From IMG/VR virus record IMGVR_UViG_3300046542_000291, positions 1 through 64,000 of that record: a stretch of 64,000 nt of DNA. One strand, written 5' to 3'. The notes beneath the pieces were generated by a model. It saw only the letters and a program-made list of their open reading frames with translations. It was not told the DNA's origin and ran no database searches. The translations under genes and the position numbers were made by a program. Of the stretch, positions 7,225 through 31,436 are shown piece by piece (positions within the stretch are counted from its first letter, which is position 1; every line of letters begins with the position of its first letter).

Positions 7225-7252
7225 ATTTACCTTTGTCTAATTAGAAGGGCGG

Positions 7253-7283
7253 CATAACGCCTCCCGAAGGAGGCATTGCTTTT
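7253..7283. terminator. hairpin terminator
   Basis: GCCTCC-CGAA-GGAGGC with CATA 5' flank. Confidence 0.65.
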
Positions 7284-8125: not shown

Positions 8126-8133
8126 GTTTACCC

Positions 8134-9872: not shown

Positions 9873-9900
9873 TATTCCTCCACGGCATACAACCACCCCA

Positions 9901-10854: not shown

Positions 10855-10866
10855 CTTCCTCTCCCG

Positions 10867-11265: not shown

Positions 11266-11295
11266 TTTCGGATCTCTCGTAAATGCCTCAAGTCA

Positions 11296-11312
11296 GTAAT
11301 ATAGATTTGAAA
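11296..11312 (-). promoter_or_regulatory. early-type promoter TTTCAAATCTATATTAC
   Basis: Match to the repeated motif. Confidence 0.7.
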
Positions 11313-11412
11313 CTTTTTGTGATCGATTGTAAGGCCTTATGTATAGTATACCCCATGTAGGTATTAGTTTACTTACGAAAACCCTCCCAGGAGCTTTATA
11401 GGAAGCCTGAGC

Positions 11413-12225: not shown

Positions 12226-12237
12226 CAAAAAAAAATA

Positions 12238-12268
12238 CATAGGCTCTCCCGTCTGGGAGAGCTTTATG
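12238..12268. terminator. bidirectional hairpin terminator
   Basis: GCTCTCCC-GTCT-GGGAGAGC with CATA/TTTATG flanks between convergent genes. Confidence 0.8.
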
Positions 12269-12269
12269 T

Positions 12270-12539
12270 TTACTTGCTTTTCTTTTTGACGAGGTCGCTA
12301 AGGACATTAGCGATGATGTGAAGAGATGCATTTTCATGAAGGTGGATTGCCTCACCTGTTTTAGTGAACGGACGCAAAGTAGCAACGTCCTCGTGCTCGT
12401 ACGAATCGTCATTCCTAGCACGGCTAACTGTAACTGTGCTGCTCCTGACTGCCACGATGTAATACCCATGCCTATATGTCGCTATCCCCTTACCGATTAG
12501 GCATGCTGCGTTAGTGATGATTAAAGTTGTGTTTTTCAT
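12270..12539 (-). CDS. hypothetical protein (89 aa), AT-rich
   Basis: AGGAG SD and its own sigma70-like promoter. Confidence 0.7.
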   Translation of the reverse strand: MKNTTLIITNAACLIGKGIATYRHGYYIVAVRSSTVTVSRARNDDSYEHEDVATLRPFTKTGEAIHLHENASLHIIANVLSDLVKKKSK

Positions 12540-12575
12540 TTCTTTCTCCTAATGTTGTTTTTGTTTGTTATTAAC

Positions 12576-12604
12576 AGTTTACCTCATTTTAAAGTAAGTG
12601 TCAA
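12576..12604 (-). promoter_or_regulatory. sigma70-type promoter TTGACA-N17-TAAACT
   Basis: Consensus -35 (12604-12599), 17-nt spacer, -10 TAAACT (12581-12576). Confidence 0.7.
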
Positions 12605-12613
12605 GTGGTACAG

Positions 12614-12650
12614 CATAAAAAGTTCTCCCCGAAGGGAGAACTCGTTTATT
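12614..12650 (-). terminator. hairpin terminator
   Basis: AGTTCTCCC-CGAA-GGGAGAACT right after the 12654 stop. Confidence 0.75.
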
Positions 12651-12653
12651 TCG

Positions 12654-13364
12654 TTAGACGTCGATGATTGCCATAAACGCCGCATGATTCTTGGCAAGGT
12701 TAGTTGCCAGTTTGAGGAAGGTCAATTGAGCACCTTCTTCGTCAACCCGTGTAACCGTGAAGAGGTGATGCCTGCCGTGGTAAACAGAAACAGCTGTGCA
12801 ATCATTGCTGATGCGACAGTTGTATTGCGAATACCAGATAACGCTTGGCAGTGGTCGCATGTCCAGAAGTTCGTTAGCCCACTTCTTTACCAGCCGTTCA
12901 AGTTCGTCGACAGAGTATTCCTTAGCGTCGACAGAATGCAACGAGGTACCCCGCTTCATCCATTCCGTCAGGTCCACGATGTTTTGAGCATCCTGGGTTG
13001 TCTTCTTGGGGTCACGTTTAGGATGACCCAGGAAATGACGGTATGCCCACAGCAAAGAGTCAGGGTGGTAGATACGGATATCATCCACAATCCAGATCCT
13101 GTCAGGCGTGCCCATGTGAATGGAAACGTCTTCAGCGATATCGATGTGAAGTCCGGTCATACCTTCCTTCTCTTCCCAACCACTGTGGCTACCACACCAC
13201 TTCTCATAAATCTCTGGAGGCAAGTCCAGATCGATATCACTGGTTTCTTTACGTAGCCCCAACAGCACCATGGCTGCGCCGTAGCCAACGATTACTTCGG
13301 TTGGATCAGCTTGCAGTTCTTGATAGACCCACTGCATGCGTGTGATGATTTCAGCACGTTTCAT
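12654..13364 (-). CDS. pol-beta superfamily nucleotidyltransferase (236 aa)
   Basis: GYGAAMVLLGLRKETSDIDL fits the GG/GxxA...G..R.T.DhD NTase signature. Confidence 0.65.
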   Translation of the reverse strand: MKRAEIITRMQWVYQELQADPTEVIVGYGAAMVLLGLRKETSDIDLDLPPEIYEKWCGSHSGWEEKEGMTGLHIDIAEDVSIHMGTPDRIWIVDDIRIYHPDSLLWAYRHFLGHPKRDPKKTTQDAQNIVDLTEWMKRGTSLHSVDAKEYSVDELERLVKKWANELLDMRPLPSVIWYSQYNCRISNDCTAVSVYHGRHHLFTVTRVDEEGAQLTFLKLATNLAKNHAAFMAIIDV

Positions 13365-13365
13365 A

Positions 13366-13884
13366 TTACTTCCTCTTTACGTCAAGTTTGGTAGTGCGGT
13401 TATGGCGAAGGGTTTCTACGATCAAGCTAGGCTTGAAAGCTTTCTGTGTATCTCGTTGCGTGAATGGTTTATCCTGATTGAATAGCACATCTCGCGACTT
13501 GTCTTGTTTGTGATGAAGCCACATGTTGAGGATGTAGCACTCTTTTGTATCCATGTACTTCTTGGCCAGATCCCAGGCTGGGTAGCCGAGAGCACGGCAG
13601 ACCAAATGTAGGCAGGTCATGTAGTTCATGCCTGACAAGTCCCGTAACTTACGGGCATGGTCTTTGACTCGCTTTTCTTTCAGACCGGGTTGTGATGCGA
13701 TACCCATCAGGATATCACCTACCCGATCATCACGTAATACGTAGTCAGGATCATCCATGTAACCATTCAGGTTATTCGCTGCCAAGAAAGCGGCGAAGTG
13801 TTCTCCTAGGGTTTTGGATACTGCTCTGACGGTGAGTTGTTTTGGTTCCTCTTGGGGAGGAATCTCTGTGATCTCAACAGACAT
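13366..13884 (-). CDS. hypothetical protein (172 aa)
   Basis: GAGG SD, downstream of an early promoter. Confidence 0.75.
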   Translation of the reverse strand: MSVEITEIPPQEEPKQLTVRAVSKTLGEHFAAFLAANNLNGYMDDPDYVLRDDRVGDILMGIASQPGLKEKRVKDHARKLRDLSGMNYMTCLHLVCRALGYPAWDLAKKYMDTKECYILNMWLHHKQDKSRDVLFNQDKPFTQRDTQKAFKPSLIVETLRHNRTTKLDVKRK

Positions 13885-13918
13885 GGTGAAGCCTCTTTAC
13901 TGGATTAGATTCATTGTA

Positions 13919-13937
13919 GTGATATAGGCTTTTAAAA
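13919..13937 (-). promoter_or_regulatory. early-type promoter TTTTAAAAGCCTATATCAC
   Basis: Match to the repeated motif. Confidence 0.7.
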
Positions 13938-13956
13938 CCTTTCAAAAAAGAAACGG

Positions 13957-13986
13957 CATATCGCCTCCCCGAAGGGAGGCTTTATG
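13957..13986. terminator. hairpin terminator
   Basis: GCCTCCC-CGAA-GGGAGGC, CATA/TTTATG flanks, after the cca stop. Confidence 0.75.
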
Positions 13987-13991
13987 TTTGT

Positions 13992-15233
13992 TCATTTCTT
14001 TGGTACGGTTGCTTTCTTGTAGGCCTTTACGGCCGTCAAGCGAGCACGTCGGATAGCTTCACCCAACACCTTCCCTGTAACACCTGTAGCCACCACTGGG
14101 CCAACATCTACGGCACGCACGACATCAGCTGCATCCCGAAGGTATTGCGCCTGCGGATAGTCACGTTGTTCAAAGCCTGTGCGTCCCCGAGCATCCATTT
14201 CACACGCCGAAACGAATTCATCGAATCGATGTGGTCGTCGGTATACATCAAAGATCTTCAGCAATGCCAGCAGCTTCGATGGAGTAAGGTCAAGAGCACG
14301 GTGGCCATGGGTGTGGTAACGACCTACCTTCATGGCTAAGTCCTGGCAGTCAGATGGAACCTTGAAGCGTTTGCTCACAGCCTTAATCAACGGCTCGCCA
14401 CTTTCTTCATGCCCGATGTGTTGTGGCCATGTTTCAGGTGGGGTTAATGCTTTACCCAGATCATGCATCAAGCACGACCAACGCACCGTCAGTGGTTGCT
14501 TGTACAGAGCAGCTTGTTCTAACACAGCCAGCACGTGGATACCTGTATCGATCTCTGGGTGATGAGCTGCTGGTTGTGGGATACCGAACAAGGCATCGAC
14601 TTCCGGCAACAACACTTTCAAGGCACCACATTCACGTAGAACTTGGATAAAGACCTGGGGATGCTCTTCCATCAACGCTCGGGACATCTCTTTCCAACTA
14701 CGCTCTGCCGTCAATGCGGCCAGCTCACCTGACGCACTGAGTTCGCACATCAACGCCATTGTTTCAGGGGCAATGGTGAAACCTAAACCAGCGTAACGGG
14801 CAGCGAAGCGAGCAACACGCAGAACACGAACTGGGTCTTCCGCAAAGGCTGGTGAGACATGGCGCAGGATGCGTGCATCCAGATCCCGTTTGCCGCCGTA
14901 GGGATCAGTCAGGTTGAGCTGATCGTCTTCAGCCATGGCATTGATCGTCAAGTCACGACGAGCCAGGTCTTCTTCCAGCGTTACTTCAGGACTGGCATGG
15001 AAGGTGAACCCGCCGTAGCCAATACCTGTTTTACGTTCGGTGCGAGCCAGTGCATATTCATCCCCGGTTTCCGGATTGATGAACACTGGGAAATCGGAAC
15101 CCACTGGTCGATAGCCTTGAGCAACCATCTCCTCAGCGGTAGAGCCAACCACCACCCAGTCCACGTCGGTTACAGGGAAGCCCAGCAATCGATCGCGTAC
15201 GGCTCCACCGACTTTATAAACGGGTGTTTTCAT
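13992..15233 (-). CDS. cca: multifunctional CCA tRNA nucleotidyltransferase / HD phosphatase (413 aa)
   Basis: [43 protein letters not shown] and the HD domain (HPEIDTG, LMHDLGK); closely follows the Pseudomonas Cca pattern. Confidence 0.95.
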
Positions 15234-15242
15234 CTTGTTCTC

Positions 15243-15557
15243 CTAGCGGTAGTGGTGCGTCATTGGAAAGATGTTGTCCATCAAACCGTCTTCGATTGCC
15301 AGGCGTGATACTGGGATAGTCAAGCCATCCTCGATGCACACTGCGTTAACAATCCGTTCAGCCTGAATGGTAACGTCAATCCAACGTGGTGTCTTCCCCG
15401 GAGCATCACGCAACCGCAACGTCAAAACTTGTGGTTGATCATTGAAACCTTTGATGTACCAATGATCACCACGACCCAGAGTAATGCGCACTTCCTCACG
15501 GGTTCCCGTGAAGTACCATTTACCATCCGACTCTTTGTTCAGTAGTAGTGGTAGCAT
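15243..15557 (-). CDS. hypothetical protein (104 aa)
   Basis: Coupled to the upstream stop (TAATG). Confidence 0.65.
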   Translation of the reverse strand: MLPLLLNKESDGKWYFTGTREEVRITLGRGDHWYIKGFNDQPQVLTLRLRDAPGKTPRWIDVTIQAERIVNAVCIEDGLTIPVSRLAIEDGLMDNIFPMTHHYR

Positions 15558-16051
15558 TATACTGCTTCCGCCTCTAGCTTGTATTTATATTGAACACCCC
15601 ATTCGGGATGTGCCCTTGCCGATGCGTAAATTGATTTCTTTCGAAGGACTGGGTATTCCTCAGTACTAACGATGGAAGTATGATAGGTAGGGTCGCTATC
15701 GGTTATGAATTGGAATAGTTCTTTGAGGTCTTCAACTTTGGCTGTTTGAACAGGAATGAGCTTCCCGTCTCCCCGAACATACCAACGTCGATATTGCCGT
15801 TTCGCCAACCGCTCCTCGACAACAGGATGAGATTGGAACTTCTCTACTTTGACACGCATGCCATTAACCGTGTTCCACACGTCGACAGTATCGTAATGTA
15901 CTAAATCATCCTTAATGAAAGCAAAGACGAAGCCTTCCAGCTTTTTGCCATAGCGGACGGCGTGTTTGAGGATCATGGCTATTTGGGCAGGCATCAGTCC
16001 GAGATCATCAGCAACGATCTCGTCCAGTAGCTTAGCTATTGACTTTGTCAT
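15557..16051 (-). CDS. hypothetical protein (MTKSIAK...)
   Basis: GGAGG SD. Confidence 0.7.
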   Translation of the reverse strand: MTKSIAKLLDEIVADDLGLMPAQIAMILKHAVRYGKKLEGFVFAFIKDDLVHYDTVDVWNTVNGMRVKVEKFQSHPVVEERLAKRQYRRWYVRGDGKLIPVQTAKVEDLKELFQFITDSDPTYHTSIVSTEEYPVLRKKSIYASARAHPEWGVQYKYKLEAEAV

Positions 16052-16133
16052 ATAGCCTCCCAATGGTTAAGTTAGTCCGGTTTCATGTCGTACCTTTCTC
16101 TTTCTTGTGGGTGGATCAAATCATTACTGCTTG

Positions 16134-16331
16134 TCAGTTAAAGCTTTTGGACATATCTTCCAACGGCAATGGACTGACCTTGTAGTAACGCTCTTCCAGC
16201 TCACCAGCAATACATTGGTGGCGGAAGAAGTTATTGGCGTCTTCTTCCTGAGTAAACCCCCGAACGAGTGACCCACCTTCAATCTCGTGGATGACCCAGA
16301 TAATGACAACGTGGTTCTTCTTCTGTGCCAT
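16134..16331 (-). CDS. hypothetical protein (65 aa)
   Basis: GGAG SD, coupled stop/start. Confidence 0.65.
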   Translation of the reverse strand: MAQKKNHVVIIWVIHEIEGGSLVRGFTQEEDANNFFRHQCIAGELEERYYKVSPLPLEDMSKSFN

Positions 16332-16759
16332 TACTCCCCCAGTATCTTGTTCATGTGTGCCAATCGCAGGACACGGTAGACTTCTTTGTTGTACATCGAT
16401 AACCCGCTACCACTAGTGAATGGGGTATAAACGACAGTGTAGCCAAGTTCGTCTTCAAGAAACTTTGCCACGGCGGCCGAACGACTGATTCCAGCAGCGC
16501 AATGGACAACGATATCTTCACCATTACACTCCGCAATGAAACGCAGTATTTTAGTGGCGTGTATGAAATCAAACACCACGTAAGCCCCGCCGATATCTTC
16601 TTCGATATCGTCAAACTCCAATCGCAATAAGCGTTTGTGTTCCACCTCAAAGACCGGTTTTGGGCTGTCGTCTTCACCGATGCTAATCATGTTGACCGGC
16701 ACACCGATGGACTGTGCCACCTGCAGCGAAAAGAAGTTAACCTTTTTGGGGTTTGGCAT
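16331..16759 (-). CDS. CX5R (PTP / dual-specificity-like) phosphatase
   Basis: VHCAAGISRSAA P-loop and the FDDI general-acid loop; start MPNPKK with GAGGT SD. Confidence 0.85.
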   Translation of the reverse strand: MPNPKKVNFFSLQVAQSIGVPVNMISIGEDDSPKPVFEVEHKRLLRLEFDDIEEDIGGAYVVFDFIHATKILRFIAECNGEDIVVHCAAGISRSAAVAKFLEDELGYTVVYTPFTSGSGLSMYNKEVYRVLRLAHMNKILGE

Positions 16760-17012
16760 AAAGTTCCACCTCACTAGGGAGCACACAGTTGCCGGTACGT
16801 GTCTTGTCTTCCATAAACCCATCGTCAATGTACAGATAGGATCGTGGGGTTACGTAGACCGCTGTCGCTGGGTTGGTGACAACGTGGTGTTTGATTGCCC
16901 CTTCACAGTCAGCCATGGTACTGAACTCAGTCAACTGTTGCTCGTGGAACAACGTGGGTAGGAACGTGCTGGTATGGAGCATTGTTACGAGTACTGCACC
17001 GACTACTGACAT
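16737..17012 (-). CDS. small hypothetical protein with hydrophobic N-terminus
   Basis: Coupled to 17012..17260. Confidence 0.6.
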   Translation of the reverse strand: MSVVGAVLVTMLHTSTFLPTLFHEQQLTEFSTMADCEGAIKHHVVTNPATAVYVTPRSYLYIDDGFMEDKTRTGNCVLPSEVELYAKPQKG

Positions 17013-17260
17013 TACGATTTACCTTGATTGATACATTCGTAGGCCGCAACTTCATACGTTTGTTTGTTGGAGATCGCAGCCTTTCCGTTTGCTGGGTTGA
17101 AGGAGACCTGGTTATTCGGATTACGTTTAGCCTGGGTGGTTTTGATTTCCAGGTGGTTGACACACTGTTGGAAGCTACCGAACGGGGTGTTGGAGAAGTC
17201 TTTGCTGGTGAGGCCGAAGAGATGTACTGTGATGTAAGTTGCAGCGAGAACCGTGGACAT
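17012..17260 (-). CDS. small hypothetical protein with hydrophobic N-terminus
   Basis: AGGA SD. Confidence 0.65.
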   Translation of the reverse strand: MSTVLAATYITVHLFGLTSKDFSNTPFGSFQQCVNHLEIKTTQAKRNPNNQVSFNPANGKAAISNKQTYEVAAYECINQGKS

Positions 17261-17292
17261 CTTATTTCCTGTAGGTCATAAAAAGAAAACAG

Positions 17293-17338
17293 CATAGAAG
17301 GAGCCCCCGTAGGGACTCCTTACCTTGGTGGGGCTATG
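17293..17338 (-). terminator. terminator after phuZ
   Basis: AAGGAG...CTCCTT hairpin with CATAG/CTATG outer arms. Confidence 0.55.
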
Positions 17339-17346
17339 CTTGTTGC

Positions 17347-18294
17347 TTAAACCACGAAACCCGCTTCGTCAGCATTGTCGTCGACACTGACCAGGCCTTT
17401 ACGGCGAGGACCTTTCGACTTCATGGTGACCAGCTTGGTTTTCTCGTCGTTGAGACCGGAGACTGCGCCCTCAACACCAACCGAGTTGATCACGAAGTGC
17501 AGTTGGGTATCACCGCCGAGTTTGGCGTCGTTACGGGCGACACCCACGGTTTGGTTGTAGGCATTGCTGAACGGAGCGATCTGGTCAACGTCGGTGTACA
17601 AGGAAGCGATCGAGATCGGGTCCAGAACACCCAGCGCTGCCTTGCGGTCAGTTTCGATGTACATGGTGCACAGTTGTGGCTCTACCGCATGACGCTTGTT
17701 GAAGAAGACCCAGTTGTGAATGTCACGTACGTCCAGGCGATCGTTCTGCTGGTCAGTCAGGCTGAGCAACGAGTCGATGGCGAACATGGCTTCGTCGTCC
17801 ATGTCAGCCCAGGCCGTTGGGTTGTTCTGAGTGAAGTGGACGATAACCGGCGAACCGGTAGCGACCGCGATACCTTCGAGGGTTTTCATGGTGTTGATCG
17901 AGTTGTCGATCTTGTCCATTGCATCCACGCAACCGATAACCACACCAACAGTCGGGTGACCACCTTTCAACAGTTCTGCCATCAAGACAGGACCGATGGT
18001 GGAACCGGAAGCACCGCCGAGGGAGAACACGACGATGTTGAACACACCCGGCTCGAAACGATCCAGGACAGTTGGAGCGAACTTACGAGCGAACGGCAGC
18101 ATATAGGAACGATCAGAACCACCGCCTTGAACGCCAGGGATCAGGAGAACCTTATCCTTCGGCAGGTGATGGGAAACGTTGGCATCACTGCCATCAACGA
18201 AACACACGTCTTCACGAGTGGCGCCAAACTTGGTGCCGATGTTGAGACCGGCGCCGCCGCAGAAGAAGATACGGGTTTTCAGTTGTTGGGACAT
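17347..18294 (-). CDS. phuZ: phage tubulin PhuZ (315 aa)
   Basis: CGGAG, GGGSDR, SLGGASGSTIGP tubulin signature, acidic C-terminal knuckle ...VDDNADEAGFVV. Confidence 0.95.
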   Translation of the reverse strand: MSQQLKTRIFFCGGAGLNIGTKFGATREDVCFVDGSDANVSHHLPKDKVLLIPGVQGGGSDRSYMLPFARKFAPTVLDRFEPGVFNIVVFSLGGASGSTIGPVLMAELLKGGHPTVGVVIGCVDAMDKIDNSINTMKTLEGIAVATGSPVIVHFTQNNPTAWADMDDEAMFAIDSLLSLTDQQNDRLDVRDIHNWVFFNKRHAVEPQLCTMYIETDRKAALGVLDPISIASLYTDVDQIAPFSNAYNQTVGVARNDAKLGGDTQLHFVINSVGVEGAVSGLNDEKTKLVTMKSKGPRRKGLVSVDDNADEAGFVV

Positions 18295-24182: not shown

Positions 24183-25427
24183 ATGAGCGAAACAACTATT
24201 GTCGACCTGTTCGACATTCACTTCGCAGACGTGCGAATTGACCGTATGCTCTGCAAGCGCATCATCGACTACACAACCCGTTACATGAACCGCAACGAAG
24301 ACCACTCTGCTTTCTTTGGTGGTGCGTTGCTCGGGGTTAACCCAATTCGTTTCTTCCCGTCCGATCGGGATGAATGGTTCGACAACGTGTTGGGTGTGAA
24401 CGAAGAGCTCTTGCAGCACGATTTCCTTAAACTGGAAATCATCGATCCAAGCCACAACGTTAACTCGGATGTGTACAACCACATTCCAGCGTACTTGTCT
24501 CGCCGGATCAACCAGGACATGTCTTTGCCAATCAACCTGCGTGAAGAGGCTATGATTGCCCTGTTCACCATGTTGCACATTAAGTACATGACCTCGCTGT
24601 TTGTTACCCGCTTTAAATACCCGGCGAAACGAGAAGTGGCTGAGGCTACTTTCATGGCCCTCAACTACAAGTGGGACATCCGACGTCTGGGTAGTTGGCA
24701 CGCACTGATTCGTGACCGTGCTTTGTCGATCATTGGCAAAGACACGAACTACACCCCGCACATCTTTGGTCGAGGTCCTACTTTAACGGATTACTGGTCT
24801 ACCCGGATTGTAACCGACACGCAAACACGTATTCGGGAAGTGATCAACAAGATGTACGCTGTCTACATCCGCTGCCTTAACGAAGGCTCTCGGGTTGTTA
24901 CGACTTCGGACATGGGGGTCAGTACGGACGGGGAGGCATTCCTTCGGGACAAGGTGGGTGGTTATCCAGCTTACTTGCACTACATCCATGAAGTGGTTCA
25001 GAATGAGAACAACTTCATTCGACCTGAACTCCTGGGGGTAATCGAACGGTCGATGATCGATTCGATGCCATCGGCTCCGTTTGAACAGACGCTCAAGTAC
25101 ATCACCAACAACGTTAACTTGCCGAAGACCAAGTACATCAACGAAATGATTGACGAATGCTTGCTTTACGCATTTGACTTCATGCAGTCGATCCGTACCC
25201 AGGTGGCACGTAACAATGACCTGGAAGGGCTGATCACTAAGATCCGTGCTCGTATCATGGCATCGCGTTCTTCTGACTCCCGTGTGTTGTATCTGCGCGA
25301 GACAGGTGAGAAGTTGGTGAAGGAAGCCACTGGTCTGCGGAACCCTGCGGTGTTGGCTGCTTGCCGTACAGGGGTCATGCTGTATCTGATCCTTCGGACG
25401 TTGACCAAAAGCTACTACACCCGGTAA
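24183..25427 (+). CDS. virion structural protein (414 aa, phiKZ gp32-like)
   Basis: AGGAG SD; FFGGALLGV motif recalled for this conserved family. Confidence 0.75.
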   Translation: MSETTIVDLFDIHFADVRIDRMLCKRIIDYTTRYMNRNEDHSAFFGGALLGVNPIRFFPSDRDEWFDNVLGVNEELLQHDFLKLEIIDPSHNVNSDVYNHIPAYLSRRINQDMSLPINLREEAMIALFTMLHIKYMTSLFVTRFKYPAKREVAEATFMALNYKWDIRRLGSWHALIRDRALSIIGKDTNYTPHIFGRGPTLTDYWSTRIVTDTQTRIREVINKMYAVYIRCLNEGSRVVTTSDMGVSTDGEAFLRDKVGGYPAYLHYIHEVVQNENNFIRPELLGVIERSMIDSMPSAPFEQTLKYITNNVNLPKTKYINEMIDECLLYAFDFMQSIRTQVARNNDLEGLITKIRARIMASRSSDSRVLYLRETGEKLVKEATGLRNPAVLAACRTGVMLYLILRTLTKSYYTR

Positions 25428-25445
25428 CAAAAAAAGAAAGGTAAA

Positions 25446-25472
25446 GCCCTCCCCGAAGGGAGGGTGCTTTAT
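25446..25472. terminator. bidirectional hairpin terminator
   Basis: CCCTCCC-CGAA-GGGAGGG between convergent genes. Confidence 0.75.
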
Positions 25473-25720
25473 CACGCATACGTCGGACTGTTACTCCTGA
25501 ACGATTCACCAATAGGTAGACCGTTTTGGAAGATCCGACACTCCACTAGTCGCCGAACAGCTCGACCACAGATGTTGCGTGCTTTCTCTACCGCATCCGT
25601 GAGCGAAGAGGCTTTTACGTTGTACGACGTGACCTCCTCAACTGGTAAGCGGTGAGGAGTTCCCATTTGATCAATCTCAAATGTTGGCGTACGCTGCAAA
25701 ACTTTTACTTCGATGTACAT
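25472..25720 (-). CDS. hypothetical protein (82 aa)
   Basis: Preceded by the triple ACTCA-N6-TGAGT leader. Confidence 0.65.
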   Translation of the reverse strand: MYIEVKVLQRTPTFEIDQMGTPHRLPVEEVTSYNVKASSLTDAVEKARNICGRAVRRLVECRIFQNGLPIGESFRSNSPTYA

Positions 25721-25832
25721 GTTATGTACTCATTCCCGTGAGTTGCTGTTGCGATACCCCGAAGCTCAAACTTCGGGAAGTTATGTACTCAGTCGTATGA
25801 GTTGATGGTGTTGTACTCAGTTGCATGAGTTG
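25721..25832. repeat. three copies of (GTTA)TGTACTCA-N6-TGAGTTG
   Basis: Copies at 25721-25745, 25780-25804 and 25810-25832; each has a 5-bp dyad around a variable 6-nt centre. Confidence 0.85.
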
Positions 25833-25851
25833 TGTTGGCTACGAATGTCAT
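25789..25851 (-). CDS. possible 20-aa leader peptide MTFVANTTHATEYNTINSYD
   Basis: AAGGA SD 8 nt upstream of ATG; reads through two of the repeats. Confidence 0.4.
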   Translation of the reverse strand: MTFVANTTHATEYNTINSYD

Positions 25852-25925
25852 GGGTGATTTCCTTGACGTTAGATGTATCCGGCGAGTCGCCGGGATTGTT
25901 AGGGATTTAGACGCTCCCCAAACGG

Positions 25926-25958
25926 CATAGTCCCACCCCTGCAAGGGTGGGCTTTATG
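25926..25958. terminator. hairpin terminator
   Basis: CCCACCC-CTGCAA-GGGTGGG, CATA/TTTATG flanks. Confidence 0.7.
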
Positions 25959-25975
25959 TCGTCTAGGGTTTGTCC

Positions 25976-26173
25976 TTACGTTAAGCGGTTAAAGCTCTGG
26001 ACCGCTTGTTCCAGTATTGCGTGTTTGAACTGGACTTTCACTTTCAATGAAGCGTTGTTCAATCGCCGACGGTTCTTGTCTTTGTCAGCGGTGAGTTTCA
26101 ACTTCAAGGCGAGGCGTTTGAATTCCTCGTGTGGGTTGTCCTGAACAAACTTCTTGAATTCCCGGTTGTTCAT
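25976..26173 (-). CDS. small basic protein (65 aa)
   Basis: GGGGA SD. Confidence 0.65.
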   Translation of the reverse strand: MNNREFKKFVQDNPHEEFKRLALKLKLTADKDKNRRRLNNASLKVKVQFKHAILEQAVQSFNRLT

Positions 26174-26187
26174 GCTGGCTTCCCCGG

Positions 26188-26553
26188 TTAGACGCTGTAC
26201 TGTAACTTCAGTTCTTTGTAGAACTTCAGAGATGTAACTTCACGCTCACTCCGTGCTTTGGCGGGGTCGCCTGGAATGGTCGCAGCGTCAGCTTGCTTTT
26301 GATAGAACGCGATTTCGGTATCGAGCTGCTCGGTCGTCATCACGCCCCACATTTTGGAAAGGCGTTCGAACGCTTCTCGATCTTCGGCTGTCATTGCCGT
26401 AGTGTCAATCTGCATCGCTTTGCTCCGCATGTGTTTTGTATAGTGGTGATGCCATGAACCACAGAACGGGTAACCGTGGACGGTTTGGTGTCTGTGGTAC
26501 AGGCGGTTGAACTCCCATGTTTCGTCGCGCTTCGCTTCCTTACGGGCATTCAT
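26188..26553 (-). CDS. hypothetical protein (121 aa)
   Basis: ATGA coupling. Confidence 0.7.
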   Translation of the reverse strand: MNARKEAKRDETWEFNRLYHRHQTVHGYPFCGSWHHHYTKHMRSKAMQIDTTAMTAEDREAFERLSKMWGVMTTEQLDTEIAFYQKQADAATIPGDPAKARSEREVTSLKFYKELKLQYSV

Positions 26554-26882
26554 TGCATTTGCTCCGATAAGGTGTTGTAGAACGCTTGTACTTCAGGAGC
26601 GTAATACTCGATCTCTTCTTTGGTGAATACACCATCGGGGTAGATGATGTACGAACCGGGTTGGAGAAAGGTGTTGGACGGGTTGGTATAAAGCTCCCCA
26701 GTTTCAGCGTACTTGCAGAGACTGTCCTCGTCGCAGATGACCAGGCTAGACTGCAGGTACATTTGGGTGAGCTTATCAGCATCGATCCGCTTGTGCTGGA
26801 TCACCCCAGCATAGGCGTTACCTGCCACGGCTACACTGAGGAGAGTTGCGAGGGTGAAACTTTTGATCCAGCTTGCAGACAT
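26550..26882 (-). CDS. putative secreted protein (110 aa)
   Basis: Signal-peptide-like N-terminus ending AYA. Confidence 0.7.
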   Translation of the reverse strand: MSASWIKSFTLATLLSVAVAGNAYAGVIQHKRIDADKLTQMYLQSSLVICDEDSLCKYAETGELYTNPSNTFLQPGSYIIYPDGVFTKEEIEYYAPEVQAFYNTLSEQMQ

Positions 26883-26887
26883 GCTAT

Positions 26888-29167
26888 TTACTCTTCGTCG
26901 GATTGAAAGGTTGGTTGAATGAGGAACTGTTTACGGGCACCATCGTAAGCAATGGACCAGATAACCAGGTTATTGCTGTACATGCCCAGCCACTTAAGGG
27001 TCTTCTCGACCTTGCCGGCTTTGACCACGAGTGGGGTGTAGATTTCTTTCCACACTTCCACGATGCTGTAGTTGCTGGTGCCTTCATTGTCCAGAATAAC
27101 GCGGACACGGTCGAGCTTGGCAATTTCGGCGTTGAAGCGAGTACGCAGCTTGCTGAACTTCTTCTGGCGACCGCCACTGAGTACATTCAGCAGCTCGGCA
27201 TTCTCACCACCCATGGAGGTGCCAGGAATGTGAACTTCAGCTTCGCCAAACGCACGAACCGGCGATTGACGTGGGGCTACTGGTTCTACCAGAGGAATGC
27301 CGCGTGGCGATACAGTTTCGTATGCCCCGTGACCACCGTCTTCACCCATGGTGTCGTCGCCGTTGAGTACACCGTGGTCCAGTTTCACCAGCAGAGCTTG
27401 TGTAGCTTCCACCAGTGTGTGTTCTGGACTACCCTGCAGTGCAACCGGTGCGATGAACAAACGGCTAGCCGATTTCCGCAGGATGATGAGTCCGCCGGAA
27501 TCAGACAGGGTGAGTTCACCGTCGGCAGTGAGCTCTGCGTGTTCGCCATGGATAGCGCGATGACCCAGAGTCCATTGCAGGCGATAGTTCTCAACCAGGG
27601 TTTCCAGATCAGACACCCATTCTTCGGCGATTACCGCACCACGCAGATCAGCGATCACATAGCGCAGAACGCTCGAGATCACATTGTAGAACGAACGGCC
27701 ACGCTTGGTCCACAACGCCACGGCGCTATCATCAGCGTTGATGGTTTGCGCAGAGAAGTCGTAGCGGAACACTTCGGTCAGATCACGGGCTACCAGGGTG
27801 ACACTACCGGGTTCAACCAACAGCTTATGACCACGGATACCGGCTTGGAACTGGTGACGCTCTTCCAGATCCAATTTCTTTTCGCGAGCAACATTACCCA
27901 GCTCGGACAGGAGCGAGGCAAACATGGTGTCGCGGAAAGTAGCCAGGCCATCGGGTGTGACCGGAACAGGCGGGATGATGAACGGCGAGTACAACTGCTT
28001 GCTGATTGTCGCCATTGCATCGGCCATGTCCGGTAGAAGGCTCAGATCGATTTCGTCAAAGTCACCTACTCGGGATACACTCCCCAGGTATTTGCCGTTA
28101 CGCACGAAGCCGACTGCTTCCGAAGTCATTTCCATGAAGATGCCATTGTCAGACATGCCTTGGTGAACACCACCCATGACAAACTGAACCAGTGGATGAC
28201 GATCGATCTTTTCAGCGTGCTTGAGGATAGCGGTCTTTGGCGAAGTAAACTGGATCGCCGATGCCTCCTCGATTTGCGCTTCTGGATCTACCGCCACGTC
28301 CTGACCGAGGTCAGTACCGTCTTCGGGCAACGCAGGTTCATGCAGATCCTGTTCGGTCGTGTAGGTCACATTACCAGCCATGACTTGATTCACCAGCTCT
28401 GCCAGGAAAGCCAGGATACGACTGATGTGGTGACCACATGGCTCAACCACTTCTTCGTGATAGCTCTTCAGCCAGTTGGCACCCAGGCGCATCCCGCCGG
28501 TGGTTTTGTTGATGACGAGCAATACTTGTTCTGGTGCTTTGGTGAACAGGGTAATCTGTCCACCTTCATTGCGGAGGTAGTAACCCACCGCAGTGATGCA
28601 CCAGCCGCTTGCACTGCGCAGCTCGCTGTAGTGTTCCACCTGTTGAATGATGGCCGAGCGGACAACGTCCCACATCGGTTCTTTCTTCAGGAGTTCACTC
28701 AGGTCGATGGCTTCGAGCGTACCACCCGCTTCTTCAGCTTCCGGGGTGTTCAGTGCACCGCCAGCGATTTCTTCAGCTGTCTTGGCAAGTTCATCTTTGA
28801 CGGCCAGTCGAGTGATGTTTTCCAGGGTAGCCATTACCGACCGATTGTTACGATCGATACCCGCGTTGGCACTGTAGAACGAGCCAAGGTAGTTGCCGCT
28901 GACGGACATCTGGCCGGTGGCGTCATGGATCTGGAAGATCGGACGTTCAGGGGCAGTGGAACCGACGACGATCAGATCGCCCGTTTGCTTGAGTGTAAAA
29001 CCGTTGTTCTCCATGGAGAAGTCCTGGAGCGCATGATGCGTCAGCAGTTCACTCTTCTGCTTGAACGCTTTGATGATGTCGTGGATCTTGGTAACGAAGG
29101 TAGGCCAGGCTGGATCGGAAACCAGATTAGCAACCAGGTCAGTGTTGTTGTGTTGTGCATCAGACAT
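26888..29167 (-). CDS. large early protein with internal repeats (759 aa)
   Basis: GAGG SD, early promoter at 29207. Confidence 0.85.
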   Translation of the reverse strand: MSDAQHNNTDLVANLVSDPAWPTFVTKIHDIIKAFKQKSELLTHHALQDFSMENNGFTLKQTGDLIVVGSTAPERPIFQIHDATGQMSVSGNYLGSFYSANAGIDRNNRSVMATLENITRLAVKDELAKTAEEIAGGALNTPEAEEAGGTLEAIDLSELLKKEPMWDVVRSAIIQQVEHYSELRSASGWCITAVGYYLRNEGGQITLFTKAPEQVLLVINKTTGGMRLGANWLKSYHEEVVEPCGHHISRILAFLAELVNQVMAGNVTYTTEQDLHEPALPEDGTDLGQDVAVDPEAQIEEASAIQFTSPKTAILKHAEKIDRHPLVQFVMGGVHQGMSDNGIFMEMTSEAVGFVRNGKYLGSVSRVGDFDEIDLSLLPDMADAMATISKQLYSPFIIPPVPVTPDGLATFRDTMFASLLSELGNVAREKKLDLEERHQFQAGIRGHKLLVEPGSVTLVARDLTEVFRYDFSAQTINADDSAVALWTKRGRSFYNVISSVLRYVIADLRGAVIAEEWVSDLETLVENYRLQWTLGHRAIHGEHAELTADGELTLSDSGGLIILRKSASRLFIAPVALQGSPEHTLVEATQALLVKLDHGVLNGDDTMGEDGGHGAYETVSPRGIPLVEPVAPRQSPVRAFGEAEVHIPGTSMGGENAELLNVLSGGRQKKFSKLRTRFNAEIAKLDRVRVILDNEGTSNYSIVEVWKEIYTPLVVKAGKVEKTLKWLGMYSNNLVIWSIAYDGARKQFLIQPTFQSDEE

Positions 29168-29206
29168 GTTGAAGCCTCTTTGCTTAGTGGGATGAATTAC
29201 ACTTTT

Positions 29207-29224
29207 GTAATATAGGTTTTAAAA
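29207..29224 (-). promoter_or_regulatory. early-type promoter TTTTAAAACCTATATTAC
   Basis: Best match to the phiKZ-like early consensus. Confidence 0.75.
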
Positions 29225-29243
29225 TGCTTTGAATGTAGGCAAA

Positions 29244-29276
29244 CATAAGCCCCTCCCAAACGGGAGGGGCTATATG
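29244..29276. terminator. terminator after terminase
   Basis: GCCCCTCCC-AAAC-GGGAGGGGC. Confidence 0.8.
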
Positions 29277-29279
29277 CCG

Positions 29280-31436
29280 TTACAGGGTTACTTGTGGACT
29301 GAAACGATTGGAACGAACACGACGAGAGCGTTCGTCTTTCACTTGACGAATCATGGCGTCGATACCAACACCAGCCGATTCTTCCAGGTTTACTAATCTG
29401 GCCATTGCCCTCAGCTTGAGTTCGATCTGAGCGGAGATCATCGGGTTCTTCTCAACCTTCATCTCTTCGACCAGTTTCTCAAAGTCGGCCTTCACCTTGT
29501 TGGCTTTCTGTTCGTGGTACAACTCAACCTTGGTTGGGATATAGTCACGCAGCGTTGCCTTGGAGAAGATGACGTTAGAACGGATGCCGTAGTACGACAA
29601 GTTCTGACCACGGATGCACACCCAGTGACCCAGCAGCATCGAGATCACCAAGTCATCGTGGTTACCGCGACTGTGGTCAATCCGACCGTTGCGAATCGTC
29701 AGGGACAGGATCTCTGTAATCAACAGGTTATCCTGGATACGGCGAGCCCCGTACACCATCGAGGATGGCAGAGCTTCCATATAGAGGCTGTCACGAGAAT
29801 ACCGACCACTACCGTTCGTAGCGTAACCGAAGTAACGCTTGAATCGATCGTAGAAGGACGGCTGACGTACCGACAATGGAGTTTGAATATCACGGAACTC
29901 TGTTTCCAGAATCGTGCACTCATCCACACACCGGTTGAAGATACGCTTGAACGGATCTTGACCCGCCCGGTGCAATGCAACAACCACGTAGTCGATGATG
30001 GCGGTACCCAACGACTTCCGTTCTGGAACGAACAAGACGTTTTGGTATTTGATCAACAGGTCAGCAAAGAACTGTGAAAGCTGTTGAACGTTGGTTTCAT
30101 TGTAACGCCCAGTCGCGATAATGTCATGCGTCTCGATGTCGAAGATAACCATACCCGTGGAGTCGTTGTCACGACCTAAGAGTTCAGAGGGGTCGACACC
30201 CATCATGAATTTACTGTTGGCCATCTTGTCAGCAATCTGTTCACGGGGAACAAACCAACGGATGGTGTATCCAGTTGGGGTGATCTCAATGAAGTTCGGT
30301 TCCCGTTCGGATTCCTTGATCAGCTTCTTCTCTTCTTGGGAGATAGGCGAACCTTCACCACCCACAGTCCAGATGTTAAAGTAATCTCGGTCAGCGATCT
30401 CGCCGTACTGTGCAGATTCACGCAGAGTGCTGAAGAGCCATTCGTCGGTACGACCAAGCTGTCGGTGGTTAAATGCACCGTAGATGATGGGCTTCTTGCC
30501 GGACGACGATTTCTCTACAACCTTACGCAGTTCCTTAGGTCCAGACAGATCGAAGAACTTCTCTGTCCATGGAGCACCGCCAGTCAAGAACTCGTGAGCG
30601 AATGCCCCATCTCGGGTGGTGATGTTACCTGCGGTTGTGGTGAACACGTTACCGTAGGGTTGACCGTTTGCACGCGCTTCATCACGAGCCGCAGAACCCG
30701 ATGCCAGTGCTACCGGCAGCGAGTACTCGATCAAGTTGATGTACGCCAATTCGTCGAAGTGCATGATAGGTACGGTCAAGCCTCGACCGAGTTTATCCGC
30801 AGCGATCTTGTCGTTACGACCTACAGCTGTCTTGTACTTGTTGTTCAAACGAATACAAGTCATCAGCTCTTGGTTGTCTGCGTCCATTGGATCTTTCAAA
30901 TGGATGTAATCAGGCAACAGGTCTTGCATTACCTTCAGACGCTCGATGTTAGCGTTCCGCAGTTTGCTGTCTTTTGTAATCAGGTTGATTACGGTGTTCT
31001 CACCCCAGACATACATCATACCTGTCATCAGTACGTCTGTCGATACAGACTTACCGGTCTGTCGAGGTTGTAGCAACCCGAAGTCAATGTGGTTGAAGAA
31101 CGACCAGAACAGGGAGATGTTACCCCGGTTCGCTTTAAACGGGATTGGGTTGTTACCCGAGGTCGGAGGAATGCGTGCAATCTCTCGGAAGTAATACCAA
31201 GGGTTGTACTTCGTCTCCAACCAGATTTTCATCTTGGTAGCATCATCAAGGTTAGGGTCGTAAGGATCTACCCCTTGGAGCTCAGGCTGCAAAAGAGCCA
31301 AGCAGAATTCAGCGTTCTCGATACCCATCTTCTTGTAGAGGGCAACCAGTTTCAAGAACGATACGTTGCGTGTTTGTGTGTCGGCAATGGCACTGGGGAA
31401 CTCTGCCCAGTCTTCCTTCCATAAAATCGTCCGCAT
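29280..31436 (-). CDS. terL: terminase large subunit (718 aa)
   Basis: Walker A PRQTGKS, Walker B MHFDE, RNase H-like MGVDPS and HDD motifs. Confidence 0.92.
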   Translation of the reverse strand: MRTILWKEDWAEFPSAIADTQTRNVSFLKLVALYKKMGIENAEFCLALLQPELQGVDPYDPNLDDATKMKIWLETKYNPWYYFREIARIPPTSGNNPIPFKANRGNISLFWSFFNHIDFGLLQPRQTGKSVSTDVLMTGMMYVWGENTVINLITKDSKLRNANIERLKVMQDLLPDYIHLKDPMDADNQELMTCIRLNNKYKTAVGRNDKIAADKLGRGLTVPIMHFDELAYINLIEYSLPVALASGSAARDEARANGQPYGNVFTTTAGNITTRDGAFAHEFLTGGAPWTEKFFDLSGPKELRKVVEKSSSGKKPIIYGAFNHRQLGRTDEWLFSTLRESAQYGEIADRDYFNIWTVGGEGSPISQEEKKLIKESEREPNFIEITPTGYTIRWFVPREQIADKMANSKFMMGVDPSELLGRDNDSTGMVIFDIETHDIIATGRYNETNVQQLSQFFADLLIKYQNVLFVPERKSLGTAIIDYVVVALHRAGQDPFKRIFNRCVDECTILETEFRDIQTPLSVRQPSFYDRFKRYFGYATNGSGRYSRDSLYMEALPSSMVYGARRIQDNLLITEILSLTIRNGRIDHSRGNHDDLVISMLLGHWVCIRGQNLSYYGIRSNVIFSKATLRDYIPTKVELYHEQKANKVKADFEKLVEEMKVEKNPMISAQIELKLRAMARLVNLEESAGVGIDAMIRQVKDERSRRVRSNRFSPQVTL

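What the first reader, a model, noticed from the sequence alone, without database searches (positions are those of the whole stretch)
25721..25851. Triple ACTCA-N6-TGAGT dyad array with a 20-aa leader ORF upstream of an 82-aa gene
Seen: three near-identical units TGTACTCA-(TTCCCG/GTCGTA/GTTGCA)-TGAGTTG, with a CCCGAAG/CTTCGGG hairpin between copies 1 and 2. On the transcribed (minus) strand the last unit ends 9 nt before the ATG at 25720 and covers its ribosome-binding region. A SD-led 20-codon ORF runs through the first two units. Constant arms with variable centres suit a dimeric repressor operator or repeated RNA hairpins for a translational regulator. No other copy was noticed in the window.
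Basis: partly seen in the sequence, partly recalled or inferred. Interest (0 to 1): 0.6.

Follow-up and report, generated by a model that had tools for sequence, protein, structure and literature searches.

The report
Triple hairpin leader of orphan phage gene
Three identical short inverted repeats sit just in front of a small gene of unknown function in an uncultured giant phage, and repeats plus gene form one insert that a close relative lacks, so they are most likely a private on/off control for that gene, though what binds them is unknown.

Summary
Three perfect copies of CAACTCA-N6-TGAGTACA lie on the minus strand at 25832-25812, 25804-25784 and 25745-25725. This is the only array of its kind in the 310-kb genome. 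Three named relatives lack even a single copy of the dyad. All 15 core positions are invariant, against 4 of 22 positions in and around the units (p=5e-7).

The window comes from an uncultured phiKZ-like jumbo phage from a rhizosphere metagenome. The array sits in a strongly structured 255-nt spacer at the far end of a predicted early operon. That operon has a promoter-like motif at 29215 and orphan genes of 759, 110, 121 and 65 aa. The array directly precedes an orphan 82-aa ORF.

An 85-92% identical relative in another public run keeps the flanking genes but lacks 25406-25901. Array, 82-aa ORF and terminator are therefore one indel cassette.

My best reading is cassette-specific RNA hairpins that control translation, with an unknown binder. 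A DNA operator is the main rival. The array fits no known family. Interest is moderate.

The parts
29207..29215 (-). Early-promoter-like motif CTATATTAC, preceded by ttcaaagcattttaaaac, in front of the 759-aa gene. It is the presumed start of the transcription unit that contains the array.
   Evidence: About 26 such motifs occur, all on the minus strand, about half of them behind a terminator hairpin. The same motif occurs 30 times in Psa21 and 20 times in RVTF4, on one strand only. It fits the description of jumbo-phage early promoters in PMC7598289.
25976..29167 (-). Four orphan genes (759, 110, 121 and 65 aa) upstream in the same predicted early operon.
   Evidence: No Pfam or PHROG hit. 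No tblastn hit in phages. The word search finds only the query itself. Coding scores are positive. No terminator-like site lies on the minus strand between 29248 and 25464.
25932..25951 (-). H1, a family-type terminator hairpin after the 65-aa gene. On the minus strand its U-tract is degenerate (GGGACUAUGCCGUUUGGGG), so read-through is likely.
   Evidence: It is called a terminator only on the plus strand. Fold energy is -16.4 kcal/mol.
25406..25901 (-). The indel cassette: H2, upstream ORFs, U1, U2, H3, U3, the 82-aa ORF and its terminator. In a relative's contig 86 other letters stand in its place.
   Evidence: Run X2 contig: matches 24800-25405, skips 496 bp with 86 letters between, then matches 25902-25922, 26026-26173, 26282-26468 and 26685-26937.
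25879..25893 (-). H2, hairpin CCGGCG-ACU-CGCCGG at the cassette's 5' edge.
   Evidence: Fold energy -10.9 kcal/mol.
25789..25851 (-). 20-codon upstream ORF (MTFVANTTHATEYNTINSYD) with AAGGAA 8 nt upstream. It runs through U1 and stops in the 3' arm of U2.
   Evidence: The coding score is not informative at 19 codons.
25812..25832 (-). Unit 1, CAACTCA-TGCAAC-TGAGTACA.
   Evidence: RNA hairpin about -4.2 kcal/mol; arm bases mostly over 0.85 paired (0.73-0.99) in the leader ensemble.
25784..25804 (-). Unit 2, CAACTCA-TACGAC-TGAGTACA, followed by TAAC.
25757..25778 (-). H3, hairpin with 9 pairs. It has no U-tract. Its 5' arm UUCCCG is also complementary to the U3 loop CGGGAA.
   Evidence: Fold energy -13.1 kcal/mol. 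Sequence.
25725..25745 (-). Unit 3, CAACTCA-CGGGAA-TGAGTACA, followed by TAAC and then the ATG. It covers the ribosome-binding region.
   Evidence: In the ensemble its 5' arm is only about 25-65% paired because the 3' arm is shared with the start-codon hairpin.
25712..25731 (-). Alternative hairpin GAGUACAU-AAC-AUGUAC.UC that buries the AUG of the 82-aa ORF. It is mutually exclusive with the unit 3 hairpin.
   Evidence: Fold energy -5.2 against -4.0 kcal/mol for U3. Unpaired probability of A, U, G is 0.36, 0.07, 0.02.
25722..25826 (-). 34-codon upstream ORF. It starts at an AUG in the U1 loop (no Shine-Dalgarno) and ends at UAA, 1 nt before the main AUG.
25472..25720 (-). 82-aa orphan ORF with a weak Shine-Dalgarno and pI 8.7. 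The predicted small sheet-plus-helix fold most resembles Dmd and AcrIF9.
25434..25471 (.). Strong bidirectional terminator shared by the 82-aa ORF (minus strand) and the convergent 414-aa head-protein gene (plus strand).

Best explanation
The three units are a cis-regulatory element private to a small accessory-gene cassette (25406-25901) at the far end of an early operon of a phiKZ-like jumbo phage. They most likely act in the mRNA.

Proposed mechanism:
1. The operon transcript, starting at the promoter-like motif at 29215, reads through the weak hairpin H1 into a 255-nt structured spacer.
2. U1 and U2 fold as identical 5-bp stem-loops, each flanked by CA on the 5' side and ACA(UAAC) on the 3' side.
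3. U3 can fold the same way, or it can give its 3' arm to a hairpin that buries the AUG of the 82-aa ORF, which has only a weak Shine-Dalgarno.
4. A sequence-specific factor recognises the constant stem and flanks. The most economical candidate is the cassette's own 82-aa product; otherwise it is a host protein. By acting on U3 it sets how much of the 82-aa protein is made.
5. U1 and U2 would serve as extra binding sites for cooperativity or titration.

Shown:
- the units, their uniqueness and the selective conservation of arms and flanks;
- the cassette indel;
- the predicted operon context;
- the predicted alternative pairings.

Inferred:
- that the region is transcribed as drawn;
- that the hairpins form in vivo;
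- that any factor binds, and the direction of control.
For: - The three units are exact and unique in the genome.
- 15 of 15 core positions are invariant against 4 of 22 others. Selection therefore acts on the arms and on asymmetric flanks. All units point the same way as the gene.
- The relative in run X2 lacks array and gene together.
- The motif is absent from Psa21, RVTF4 and D6 and shows no array in IMG/VR or JGI contigs. Any binder's only targets in this phage are thus in the cassette.
- There is no sigma-70-like promoter or phage early motif in the spacer, and no minus-strand terminator between 29248 and 25464. The units are therefore probably transcribed.
- The leader fold has z = -5.3. 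U1 and U2 arms are mostly over 0.85 paired (0.73-0.99), and U3 competes with the AUG-burying hairpin.
- There is precedent for regulators that read inverted repeats as RNA hairpins in 5' UTRs and between cistrons, in Aca2 and Aca1 (PMC13551039).
- Established knowledge: in nucleus-forming phages the DNA is shielded from cytoplasmic proteins and translation is uncoupled from transcription. This makes RNA the more accessible target.
Against: - There is no RNA data.
- There are no orthologous arrays, so covariation cannot be tested.
- Loops vary while stems are constant. This is the opposite of most protein-hairpin operators and the classic signature of a DNA dimer site.
- The stems are short, -3 to -4 kcal/mol each.
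- The 82-aa model shows no known nucleic-acid-binding fold. The homodimer test gave no verdict.
- The promoter assignment rests on a motif and on literature analogy, not on mapped 5' ends.
Confidence: 0.4

Rival explanations
1. DNA operator array. A dimeric DNA-binding protein, from the phage, the cassette or the host, binds the three 16-bp dyads. Their half-sites are 11 bp apart centre to centre. Binding would block or roadblock transcription into the 82-aa gene, in the manner of a tripartite lambda-type operator or Aca-type inverted repeats.
For: - The arms are constant and the centres variable, with the geometry of one helical turn.
- U1 and U2 are 28 bp apart, close to the 23-24 bp spacing of the lambda operators.
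- Arrays of (T)ACTCA-N6-TGAGT(A) upstream of bacterial AAA_14/DUF4143 genes show that this dyad type is used as a sequence-conserved site across phyla.
Against: - No promoter is recognisable in the spacer.
- The conserved flanks are asymmetric (CA on one side, ACA on the other).
- The spacings of 28 and 59 bp are not in helical phase.
- No HTH, RHH or Aca2 gene lies in or near the cassette. Only one sub-threshold HTH_3 frame exists in 310 kb.
- Early DNA of such phages is enclosed, from established knowledge.
Confidence: 0.2
2. Factor-independent RNA element. The repeated short hairpins, together with H2 and H3, simply structure the intercistronic spacer. They could stabilise or process the distal cistron, or allow translation of the 82-aa ORF only by coupling to an upstream ORF that unwinds them. 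The 34-codon frame ends 1 nt before the AUG.
For: - The spacer is very structured, with z = -5.3.
- The main ORF has a weak Shine-Dalgarno and a buried AUG.
- Upstream ORFs end inside U2 and 1 nt before the AUG.
Against: - Structure alone does not require three identical arm and flank sequences.
- The 34-codon frame has no Shine-Dalgarno.
Confidence: 0.15
3. Non-functional local triplication, that is a slippage or duplication relic, or a chance cluster.
For: - The array occurs in one genome only, with no conservation elsewhere.
Against: - Chance is excluded by shuffles.
- A neutral relic would not keep 15 of 15 core positions while centres and flanks diverged.
Confidence: 0.1
4. Sites for cassette mobility or recombination, or protein-binding decoys. 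For example, they could mimic host operator arrays of the ACTCA-N6-TGAGT type found at AAA_14/DUF4143 genes.
For: - The array is part of an indel bounded by family-type terminator hairpins.
- It shares the core dyad with the DUF4143-linked arrays.
Against: - No recombinase or nuclease gene is in the cassette.
- The units are internal to the cassette, not at its ends.
- Spacing and the 5' half-site differ from the 22-bp-period bacterial arrays.
- The phage has no DUF4143 gene, and the host is unknown.
Confidence: 0.08

Closest known systems
Aca2/Aca1 control of anti-CRISPR operons: inverted-repeat DNA plus hairpins in the 5' UTR or between cistrons (PMC13551039)
   Same: - Short inverted repeats sit in front of small, early, accessory phage genes.
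- The hairpins overlap or neighbour the ribosome-binding site.
- Several sites occur per locus.
- The stem sequence is what the protein reads.
- The 82-aa model's nearest folds include AcrIF9, a frequent cargo of such operons.
   Different: - No Aca (HTH or RHH) gene is in the cassette or detectably in the phage.
- No promoter overlaps the repeats.
- The motif sequence is unrelated.
- The phage is a virulent nucleus-forming jumbo phage.
Classical translational operators: MS2/PP7 coat protein hairpin, T4 gp43 and RegA operators, Mu Com-mom activation
   Same: - A short stem-loop lies at or next to the start codon of the regulated gene.
- There is possible autoregulation by a small phage protein.
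- As in Com-mom, stabilising one hairpin (U3) would free a start codon held in another.
   Different: - Those operators are single, and the protein reads loop or bulge bases.
- Here there are three copies with variable loops and constant stems.
- The protein has no similarity to any of those proteins.
Lambda-type tripartite operators (OR1-3, OL1-3)
   Same: - Three dyad sites of about 16-21 bp are close together upstream of a gene.
- Centres are variable.
   Different: - There is no repressor gene.
- There are no overlapping promoters.
- Spacing is irregular, at 28 and 59 bp.
- The flanks are conserved and asymmetric.
PeSL composite promoter-terminator cassettes that shuffle orphan genes in T4-type phages (PMC2839356, PMC4122927)
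   Same: - An orphan gene is present or absent between close relatives.
- The indel lies between repeated terminator-type stem-loops of a genome-wide family that is often fused to an early promoter.
   Different: - This explains how the cassette may have arrived, not what the triple dyad does.
- The dyad itself is not part of the repeated promoter-terminator family.
22-bp-period arrays of TTTTACTCA-N6-TGAGTAAAA upstream of bacterial AAA_14/DUF4143 ATPase genes (seen here; I found no description of them, though only 'DUF4143' was searched in the literature)
   Same: - They share the core dyad ACTCA-N6-TGAGT, with variable centres and three or more copies.
- The last unit lies within 0-81 bp of the start codon.
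   Different: - They have a regular 22-bp period and symmetric T/A flanks.
- They are always next to a DUF4143 gene, which the phage lacks.
- The shared core was the search criterion, so the resemblance is partly by construction.

Membership tests
Dimeric-repressor DNA operator array (lambda or Aca type) | Inverted repeat with half-sites about one helical turn apart, repeated | tested here: met
   Three copies of ACTCA-N6-TGAGT, with 11 bp between half-site centres.
Dimeric-repressor DNA operator array (lambda or Aca type) | Sites overlap a promoter | tested here: not met
   No sigma-70-like site and no phage early motif in 25721-25975. The only TATG (25929-25926) lies upstream of the cassette.
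Dimeric-repressor DNA operator array (lambda or Aca type) | Cognate HTH or RHH regulator encoded with the sites | tested here: not met
   No Pfam or PHROG hit in the five neighbouring proteins. No Aca2_YdiL or RHH_1 in the genome, and HTH_3 only sub-threshold at 112.8 kb.
Dimeric-repressor DNA operator array (lambda or Aca type) | Protein binds the duplex | not testable with these tools
   Needs EMSA or footprinting.
RNA hairpin translational operator | Hairpins lie in the transcribed leader | tested here: inconclusive
   Predicted from the promoter motif at 29215 and the absence of a minus-strand terminator before 25464. No RNA run holds the phage.
RNA hairpin translational operator | Operator overlaps the Shine-Dalgarno or start codon, or controls its accessibility | tested here: met
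   U3 ends 4 nt before the AUG and competes with the AUG-burying hairpin. This is a thermodynamic prediction only.
RNA hairpin translational operator | Pairing kept by compensatory changes among homologues | not testable with these tools
   No homologous array exists in any collection searched. The three copies have identical stems.
Type III toxin-antitoxin (ToxIN-like) | Regular tandem repeats of about 34-36 nt, then a terminator, then an endoribonuclease gene of about 170 aa | tested here: not met
   Spacings are 28 and 59 nt. H3 lies between U2 and U3 and has no U-tract. The ORF is 82 aa with no family hit.
N4-type hairpin promoters for virion RNA polymerase | 5-7 bp stem with a 3-nt loop, read by a single-subunit virion RNA polymerase, dispersed at early genes | tested here: not met
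   Loops are 6 nt. The phage belongs to the phiKZ-like group with multisubunit RNA polymerases and has its own early motif. The N4 features are recalled from established knowledge.
Leader-peptide transcription attenuator | Leader ORF plus alternative terminator and antiterminator, with coupled transcription and translation | tested here: not met
   H3 has no U-tract. The leader has no run of regulatory codons. Coupling is not expected in nucleus-forming phages, from established knowledge.
AAA_14/DUF4143-associated dyad arrays | TACTCA-N6-TGAGTA at a 22-bp period directly upstream of a DUF4143 ATPase gene | tested here: not met
   Spacings are 28 and 59. The 5' half-site is AACTCA. There is no DUF4143 in the phage.
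PeSL-like mobile regulatory cassette (context of the array, not the array itself) | Orphan gene indel between close relatives, bounded by repeated promoter/terminator stem-loops | tested here: inconclusive
   The indel is shown. Family-type hairpins lie at 25932-25951 and 25434-25471. The relative's junction sequence could not be read.

The most novel reading that the evidence does not exclude
The cassette is a self-contained, autoregulated anti-defence module of a nucleus-forming jumbo phage. In this reading, an early Dmd/AcrIF9-like 82-aa inhibitor without any HTH binds three identical stem-loops in its own intercistronic leader and sets its own translation. That would be a new protein-RNA operator pair and a regulator-free counterpart of acr-aca operons. 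A still bolder variant is that the array titrates a host protein that reads ACTCA-N6-TGAGT sites.
Probability: 0.1. Interest if true: 0.65.

Novelty: new variant of a known kind. Interest (0 to 1): 0.4.

Why it matters
Little is known about how phiKZ-like phages regulate individual early genes beyond promoter classes. Their DNA is shielded, so control at the mRNA level is expected but few cases are documented.

Here is a compact and testable case of about 500 bp: three identical dyads, a start codon that can be hidden, and an orphan early protein whose model looks like known phage inhibitors of host defence. All of it is gained or lost as one unit.

If the units prove to be a protein-RNA switch, they would give a new operator/binder pair and a marker for finding accessory, possibly anti-defence, cassettes in jumbo phages. 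If they do nothing, the case is merely an oddity of one metagenomic phage.

Tried and rejected
**Searches for the array elsewhere**
- IMG/VR single unit: 57 single hits, which is chance level.
- IMG/VR two-unit pattern: 4 unrelated tandem repeats.
- JGI metagenomes, phage-type two-unit pattern: 4 unrelated repeats.
- Species genomes: more than 120 loci, all other repeat families.

**Relatives of the 82-aa protein.** None were found:
- Pfam and PHROGs.
- tblastn against phages and IMG/VR.
- Word search: only the query itself.
- Exhaustive phmmer: only a repetitive coiled-coil protein that is not the window's 759-aa protein.
- PDB sequences.
- ESM Atlas: nothing above chance.
- Foldseek against PDB and BFVD: nothing.

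**Other checks**
- Homodimer prediction of the 82-aa protein: no verdict, so not evidence either way.
- Rfam: only a sub-threshold match at the terminator.
- I tried to fetch the relative's contig through its 121-aa homologue, but the protein is not in the collection.
- A 40-bp match to phiKZ is just the shared terminator type.

**Functions rejected**
- Replication origin or packaging site. There is no skew feature here, and a close relative lacks the whole segment.
- General promoter class, because the motif is unique.
- Coding repeat. U1 and U3 read T/A-T-H-x-x-E-Y in one frame, but the conservation pattern is not codon-like and U2 is out of frame.

**Considered only from memory of consensus sequences, not tested**
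- Integron attC, CRISPR-repeat mimic (RNA anti-CRISPR), a CsrA/RsmA site (GGA in the U3 loop only), and host operators such as CRP, the GacA box and LexA.

Full report
**What is there.** On the minus strand the stretch 25832-25725 holds three perfect copies of the 21-nt element CAACTCA-N6-TGAGTACA. They are U1 at 25832-25812, U2 at 25804-25784 and U3 at 25745-25725. Each contains the 5-bp dyad ACTCA/TGAGT around a 6-nt centre: TGCAAC, TACGAC and CGGGAA. None of 100 shuffles of the window gave three matches.

The bare dyad occurs nowhere else in the window or in the complete 310,396-bp genome. There are no copies with one or two mismatches. A motif-blind scan for any repeated 5-bp-arm dyad (spacer 3-9, at least two copies within 200 bp) returns this array as the only case in the genome. 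Shuffles gave 0-1 pairs and never a triple.

All 15 arm and flank positions are identical in the three copies. Only 4 of the 22 centre and outer positions are identical (Fisher p=5e-7). Selection therefore holds the arms and the asymmetric flanks (CA on the 5' side, ACA on the 3' side) but not the centres. U2 and U3 are also both followed by TAAC.

The CCCGAAG/CTTCGGG hairpin H3 lies at 25757-25778. The 20-codon ORF runs 25851-25789 with AAGGAA upstream. The 82-aa ORF runs 25720-25472. The unit ends 4 nt before the ATG, and the dyad arm 7 nt before it, not 9 nt.

**Whose genome.** The window is the first 64 kb of an IMG/VR virus record with terminal repeats. A rhizosphere metagenome run holds the stretch letter for letter and is probably its source. 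The 414-aa head protein (24183-25427, plus strand) is 67-71% identical to those of Pseudomonas phages D6, Psa21 and RVTF4. It has relatives in 290 phiKZ-like phages. The terminase, tail sheath and PhuZ context agrees with this placement. This is therefore an uncultured nucleus-forming-type (phiKZ-like) jumbo phage, probably of a Pseudomonas.

**Transcriptional context.** An AT-rich motif, ttgaaagcNttttaaaag-CTATATTAC, occurs about 26 times, always on the minus strand. About half the copies lie just behind a terminator hairpin of the family CATAAAGCCTCCC...GGGAGGCTTTATGCCGTTTTCTTTTT. The same motif occurs 30 times in Psa21 and 20 times in RVTF4, again on one strand only. This matches the published description of jumbo-phage early promoters: a conserved, AT-rich element of about 10 nt found bioinformatically upstream of early operons (PMC7598289).

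One copy sits at 29215-29207, 40 nt before the 759-aa gene. From there no terminator-like site exists on the minus strand until 25464-25434, behind the 82-aa ORF. The hairpin H1 after the 65-aa gene (25932-25951) belongs to the terminator family. Its U-tract, however, is intact only on the plus strand.

The most likely transcription unit is therefore: early promoter, 759 aa, 110 aa, 121 aa, 65 aa, a 255-nt spacer with the array, 82 aa, terminator. The spacer itself holds no sigma-70-like site and no early motif. All five proteins are orphans. The transcription of this unit is inferred, because no RNA run holds the phage.

**The array and the gene are one indel.** A second public run (X2, DNA contigs) holds a relative at roughly 85-92% identity. 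One 2,959-nt contig matches 24800-25405, then has 86 other letters in place of 25406-25901. It resumes at 25902-25922 and then matches the 65-, 121- and 110-aa genes.

The missing 496 bp are H2, the upstream ORFs, U1, U2, H3, U3, the 82-aa ORF and its terminator. The segment lies between two terminator-family hairpins. This recalls the promoter-terminator cassettes (PeSLs) that shuffle orphan genes in T4-type phages (PMC2839356, PMC4122927).

Three consequences follow:
- The array belongs functionally to the 82-aa gene, not to the upstream genes.
- Genome-level roles such as a replication origin or packaging site are unlikely.
- Whatever reads the units has no other target in this phage. It is therefore either the cassette's own product or a host factor.

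**The 82-aa ORF.**
- Its frame is the only one of six with a positive codon score. The score is modest, which fits a foreign gene.
- A single-sequence AlphaFold2 model is fairly confident, with pLDDT 76 and a four-strand, helix, two-strand layout.
- Exhaustive sequence searches find no relative.
- Nothing suggests a classical nucleic-acid-binding fold. The pI is 8.7, with an Arg-rich helix at residues 40-54. A homodimer prediction gave no verdict.

**RNA behaviour.** The spacer folds far better than shuffles (-87.9 kcal/mol, z = -5.3). In the ensemble of a leader taken from 25926, U1 and U2 form their 5-bp hairpins, with arm bases mostly over 0.85 paired (0.73-0.99) and about -4 kcal/mol each. 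The 3' arm of U3 is instead mostly used by the hairpin GAGUACAU-AAC-AUGUAC.UC (-5.2 kcal/mol). That hairpin buries the AUG, whose three bases have unpaired probabilities of 0.36, 0.07 and 0.02.

The main ORF has only a GAG 9 nt upstream as a Shine-Dalgarno. The U3 loop CGGGAA is complementary to UUCCCG in the 5' arm of H3. A 34-codon frame starting in the U1 loop ends at UAA, 1 nt before the main AUG. Anything that stabilises the U3 hairpin would free the AUG, and anything that sits on U3 would cover the ribosome-binding region. The direction of control cannot be told from sequence.

**DNA or RNA.**

Points for DNA:
- Constant arms, variable centres and half-sites one turn apart are the textbook signature of a dimer site.
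- The same core dyad is used as a sequence-conserved site in bacteria (see the last section).

Points for RNA:
- The flanks are conserved but asymmetric, and all units point with the gene.
- No promoter is in reach.
- The spacings of 28 and 59 bp are out of helical phase.
- No HTH or RHH gene is in the cassette or detectable in the phage, apart from one sub-threshold frame at 112.8 kb.
- Aca2 and Aca1 show that regulators can read such inverted repeats as RNA stems in 5' UTRs and between cistrons (PMC13551039).
- From established knowledge, the DNA of these phages is enclosed from the start of infection while their mRNAs are translated in the cytoplasm.

I put the RNA reading at 0.4 and the DNA operator at 0.2. 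The rest is divided among a factor-free structural or coupling element, a neutral relic, and mobility or decoy ideas.

**Comparison with known systems.** The array works most like the operators of Aca-controlled anti-defence operons or classical phage translational operators. It fails or cannot be tested on their defining features. There is no cognate regulator, no promoter overlap, no conserved loop, and no homologues for covariation.

It is not any of the following:
- a ToxIN-type repeat, because the spacing is irregular and there is no ToxN;
- an N4-type hairpin promoter, because the loops are 6 nt and the polymerase system is different;
- a leader-peptide attenuator, because there is no terminator partner and coupling is not expected;
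- a member of the DUF4143-linked arrays, because the period and flanks are wrong and the gene is absent.

I therefore file it as a new variant of a known kind: a repeated dyad control element in a gene leader. It is known so far from one genome.

**Seen on the way.** The scan of species genomes with two ACTCA-N6-TGAGT units uncovered 22-bp-period arrays of TTTTACTCA-N6-TGAGTAAAA in very different phyla. In nine loci they lie directly upstream of an AAA_14/DUF4143 ATPase gene. These, the early-promoter and terminator modules, and the mosaic divergence of the early genes in the relative are listed under Noticed in passing.

Noticed in passing
window 119, 11304, 13927, 21852, 24125, 29215 (all minus strand); about 20 more in the rest of the genome: A conserved early-promoter-like motif, ttgaaagcNttttaaaag-CTATATTAC, occurs about 26 times, all on one strand. 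About half the copies are fused behind a terminator hairpin of the family CATAAAGCCTCCC..GGGAGGCTTTATGCCGTTTTCTTTTT. The same motif occurs 30 times in Psa21 and 20 times in RVTF4. These composite terminator-promoter modules resemble the PeSLs of T4-type phages and may drive gene shuffling in this group.
   Followed up: partly
loci L075, L085, L090, L093, L110, L115, L119, L121, L125, L129, L139, L143 (species genomes): Tandem arrays of three or more units with a 22-bp period, of the form TTTTACTCA-N6-TGAGTAAAA with variable centres, occur in very different phyla, including Treponema, Chlorobiota, TM6, Parachlamydiales, Bacteroidota and Sutterella. In nine loci they lie 0-81 bp upstream of an AAA_14 + DUF4143 ATPase gene of about 400 aa. 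This looks like an operator or iteron array of that widespread, poorly studied family. A literature search on the term DUF4143 alone gave 4 passing mentions.
   Followed up: partly
window 26173-26282 and 26468-26685 (121-aa and 110-aa genes): In the relative from run X2 these stretches have the same length but have diverged beyond 80% likeness, while the flanks are 85-92% alike. The early orphan genes therefore show mosaic or fast-evolving patches.
   Followed up: no
window 26550-26882 (-): The 110-aa early-operon protein starts with a typical signal peptide (MSASWIKSFTLATLLSVAVAGNAYA) and is acidic (pI 4.4). It looks like a secreted or periplasmic early phage protein.
   Followed up: no
window 24183-31436 compared with Psa21 3632-17489: Synteny breaks at this locus. 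In Psa21, D6 and RVTF4 the 414-aa head-protein gene faces a block of sheath-proximal genes. Here it faces the orphan early operon that follows the terminase gene.
   Followed up: partly
window 25427-25466: The bidirectional terminator is 90% identical over 40 bp to intergenic terminators of phiKZ and 45 further Pseudomonas phage records. The hairpin type is thus shared across the group.
   Followed up: no
genome 112770-112904 (-), outside the window: This is the only HTH_3-like frame in the phage (93 aa, 16.8 bits, below the cut-off). It is a possible small Xre-type regulator.
   Followed up: no
loci L078, L080, L104, L106, L135, L138 (Streptomyces, Nocardiopsis): Paired 16-bp palindromes ACTCATGTACATGAGT lie about 36 bp apart. 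This is a conserved actinobacterial operator-like pair of unknown regulator.
   Followed up: no
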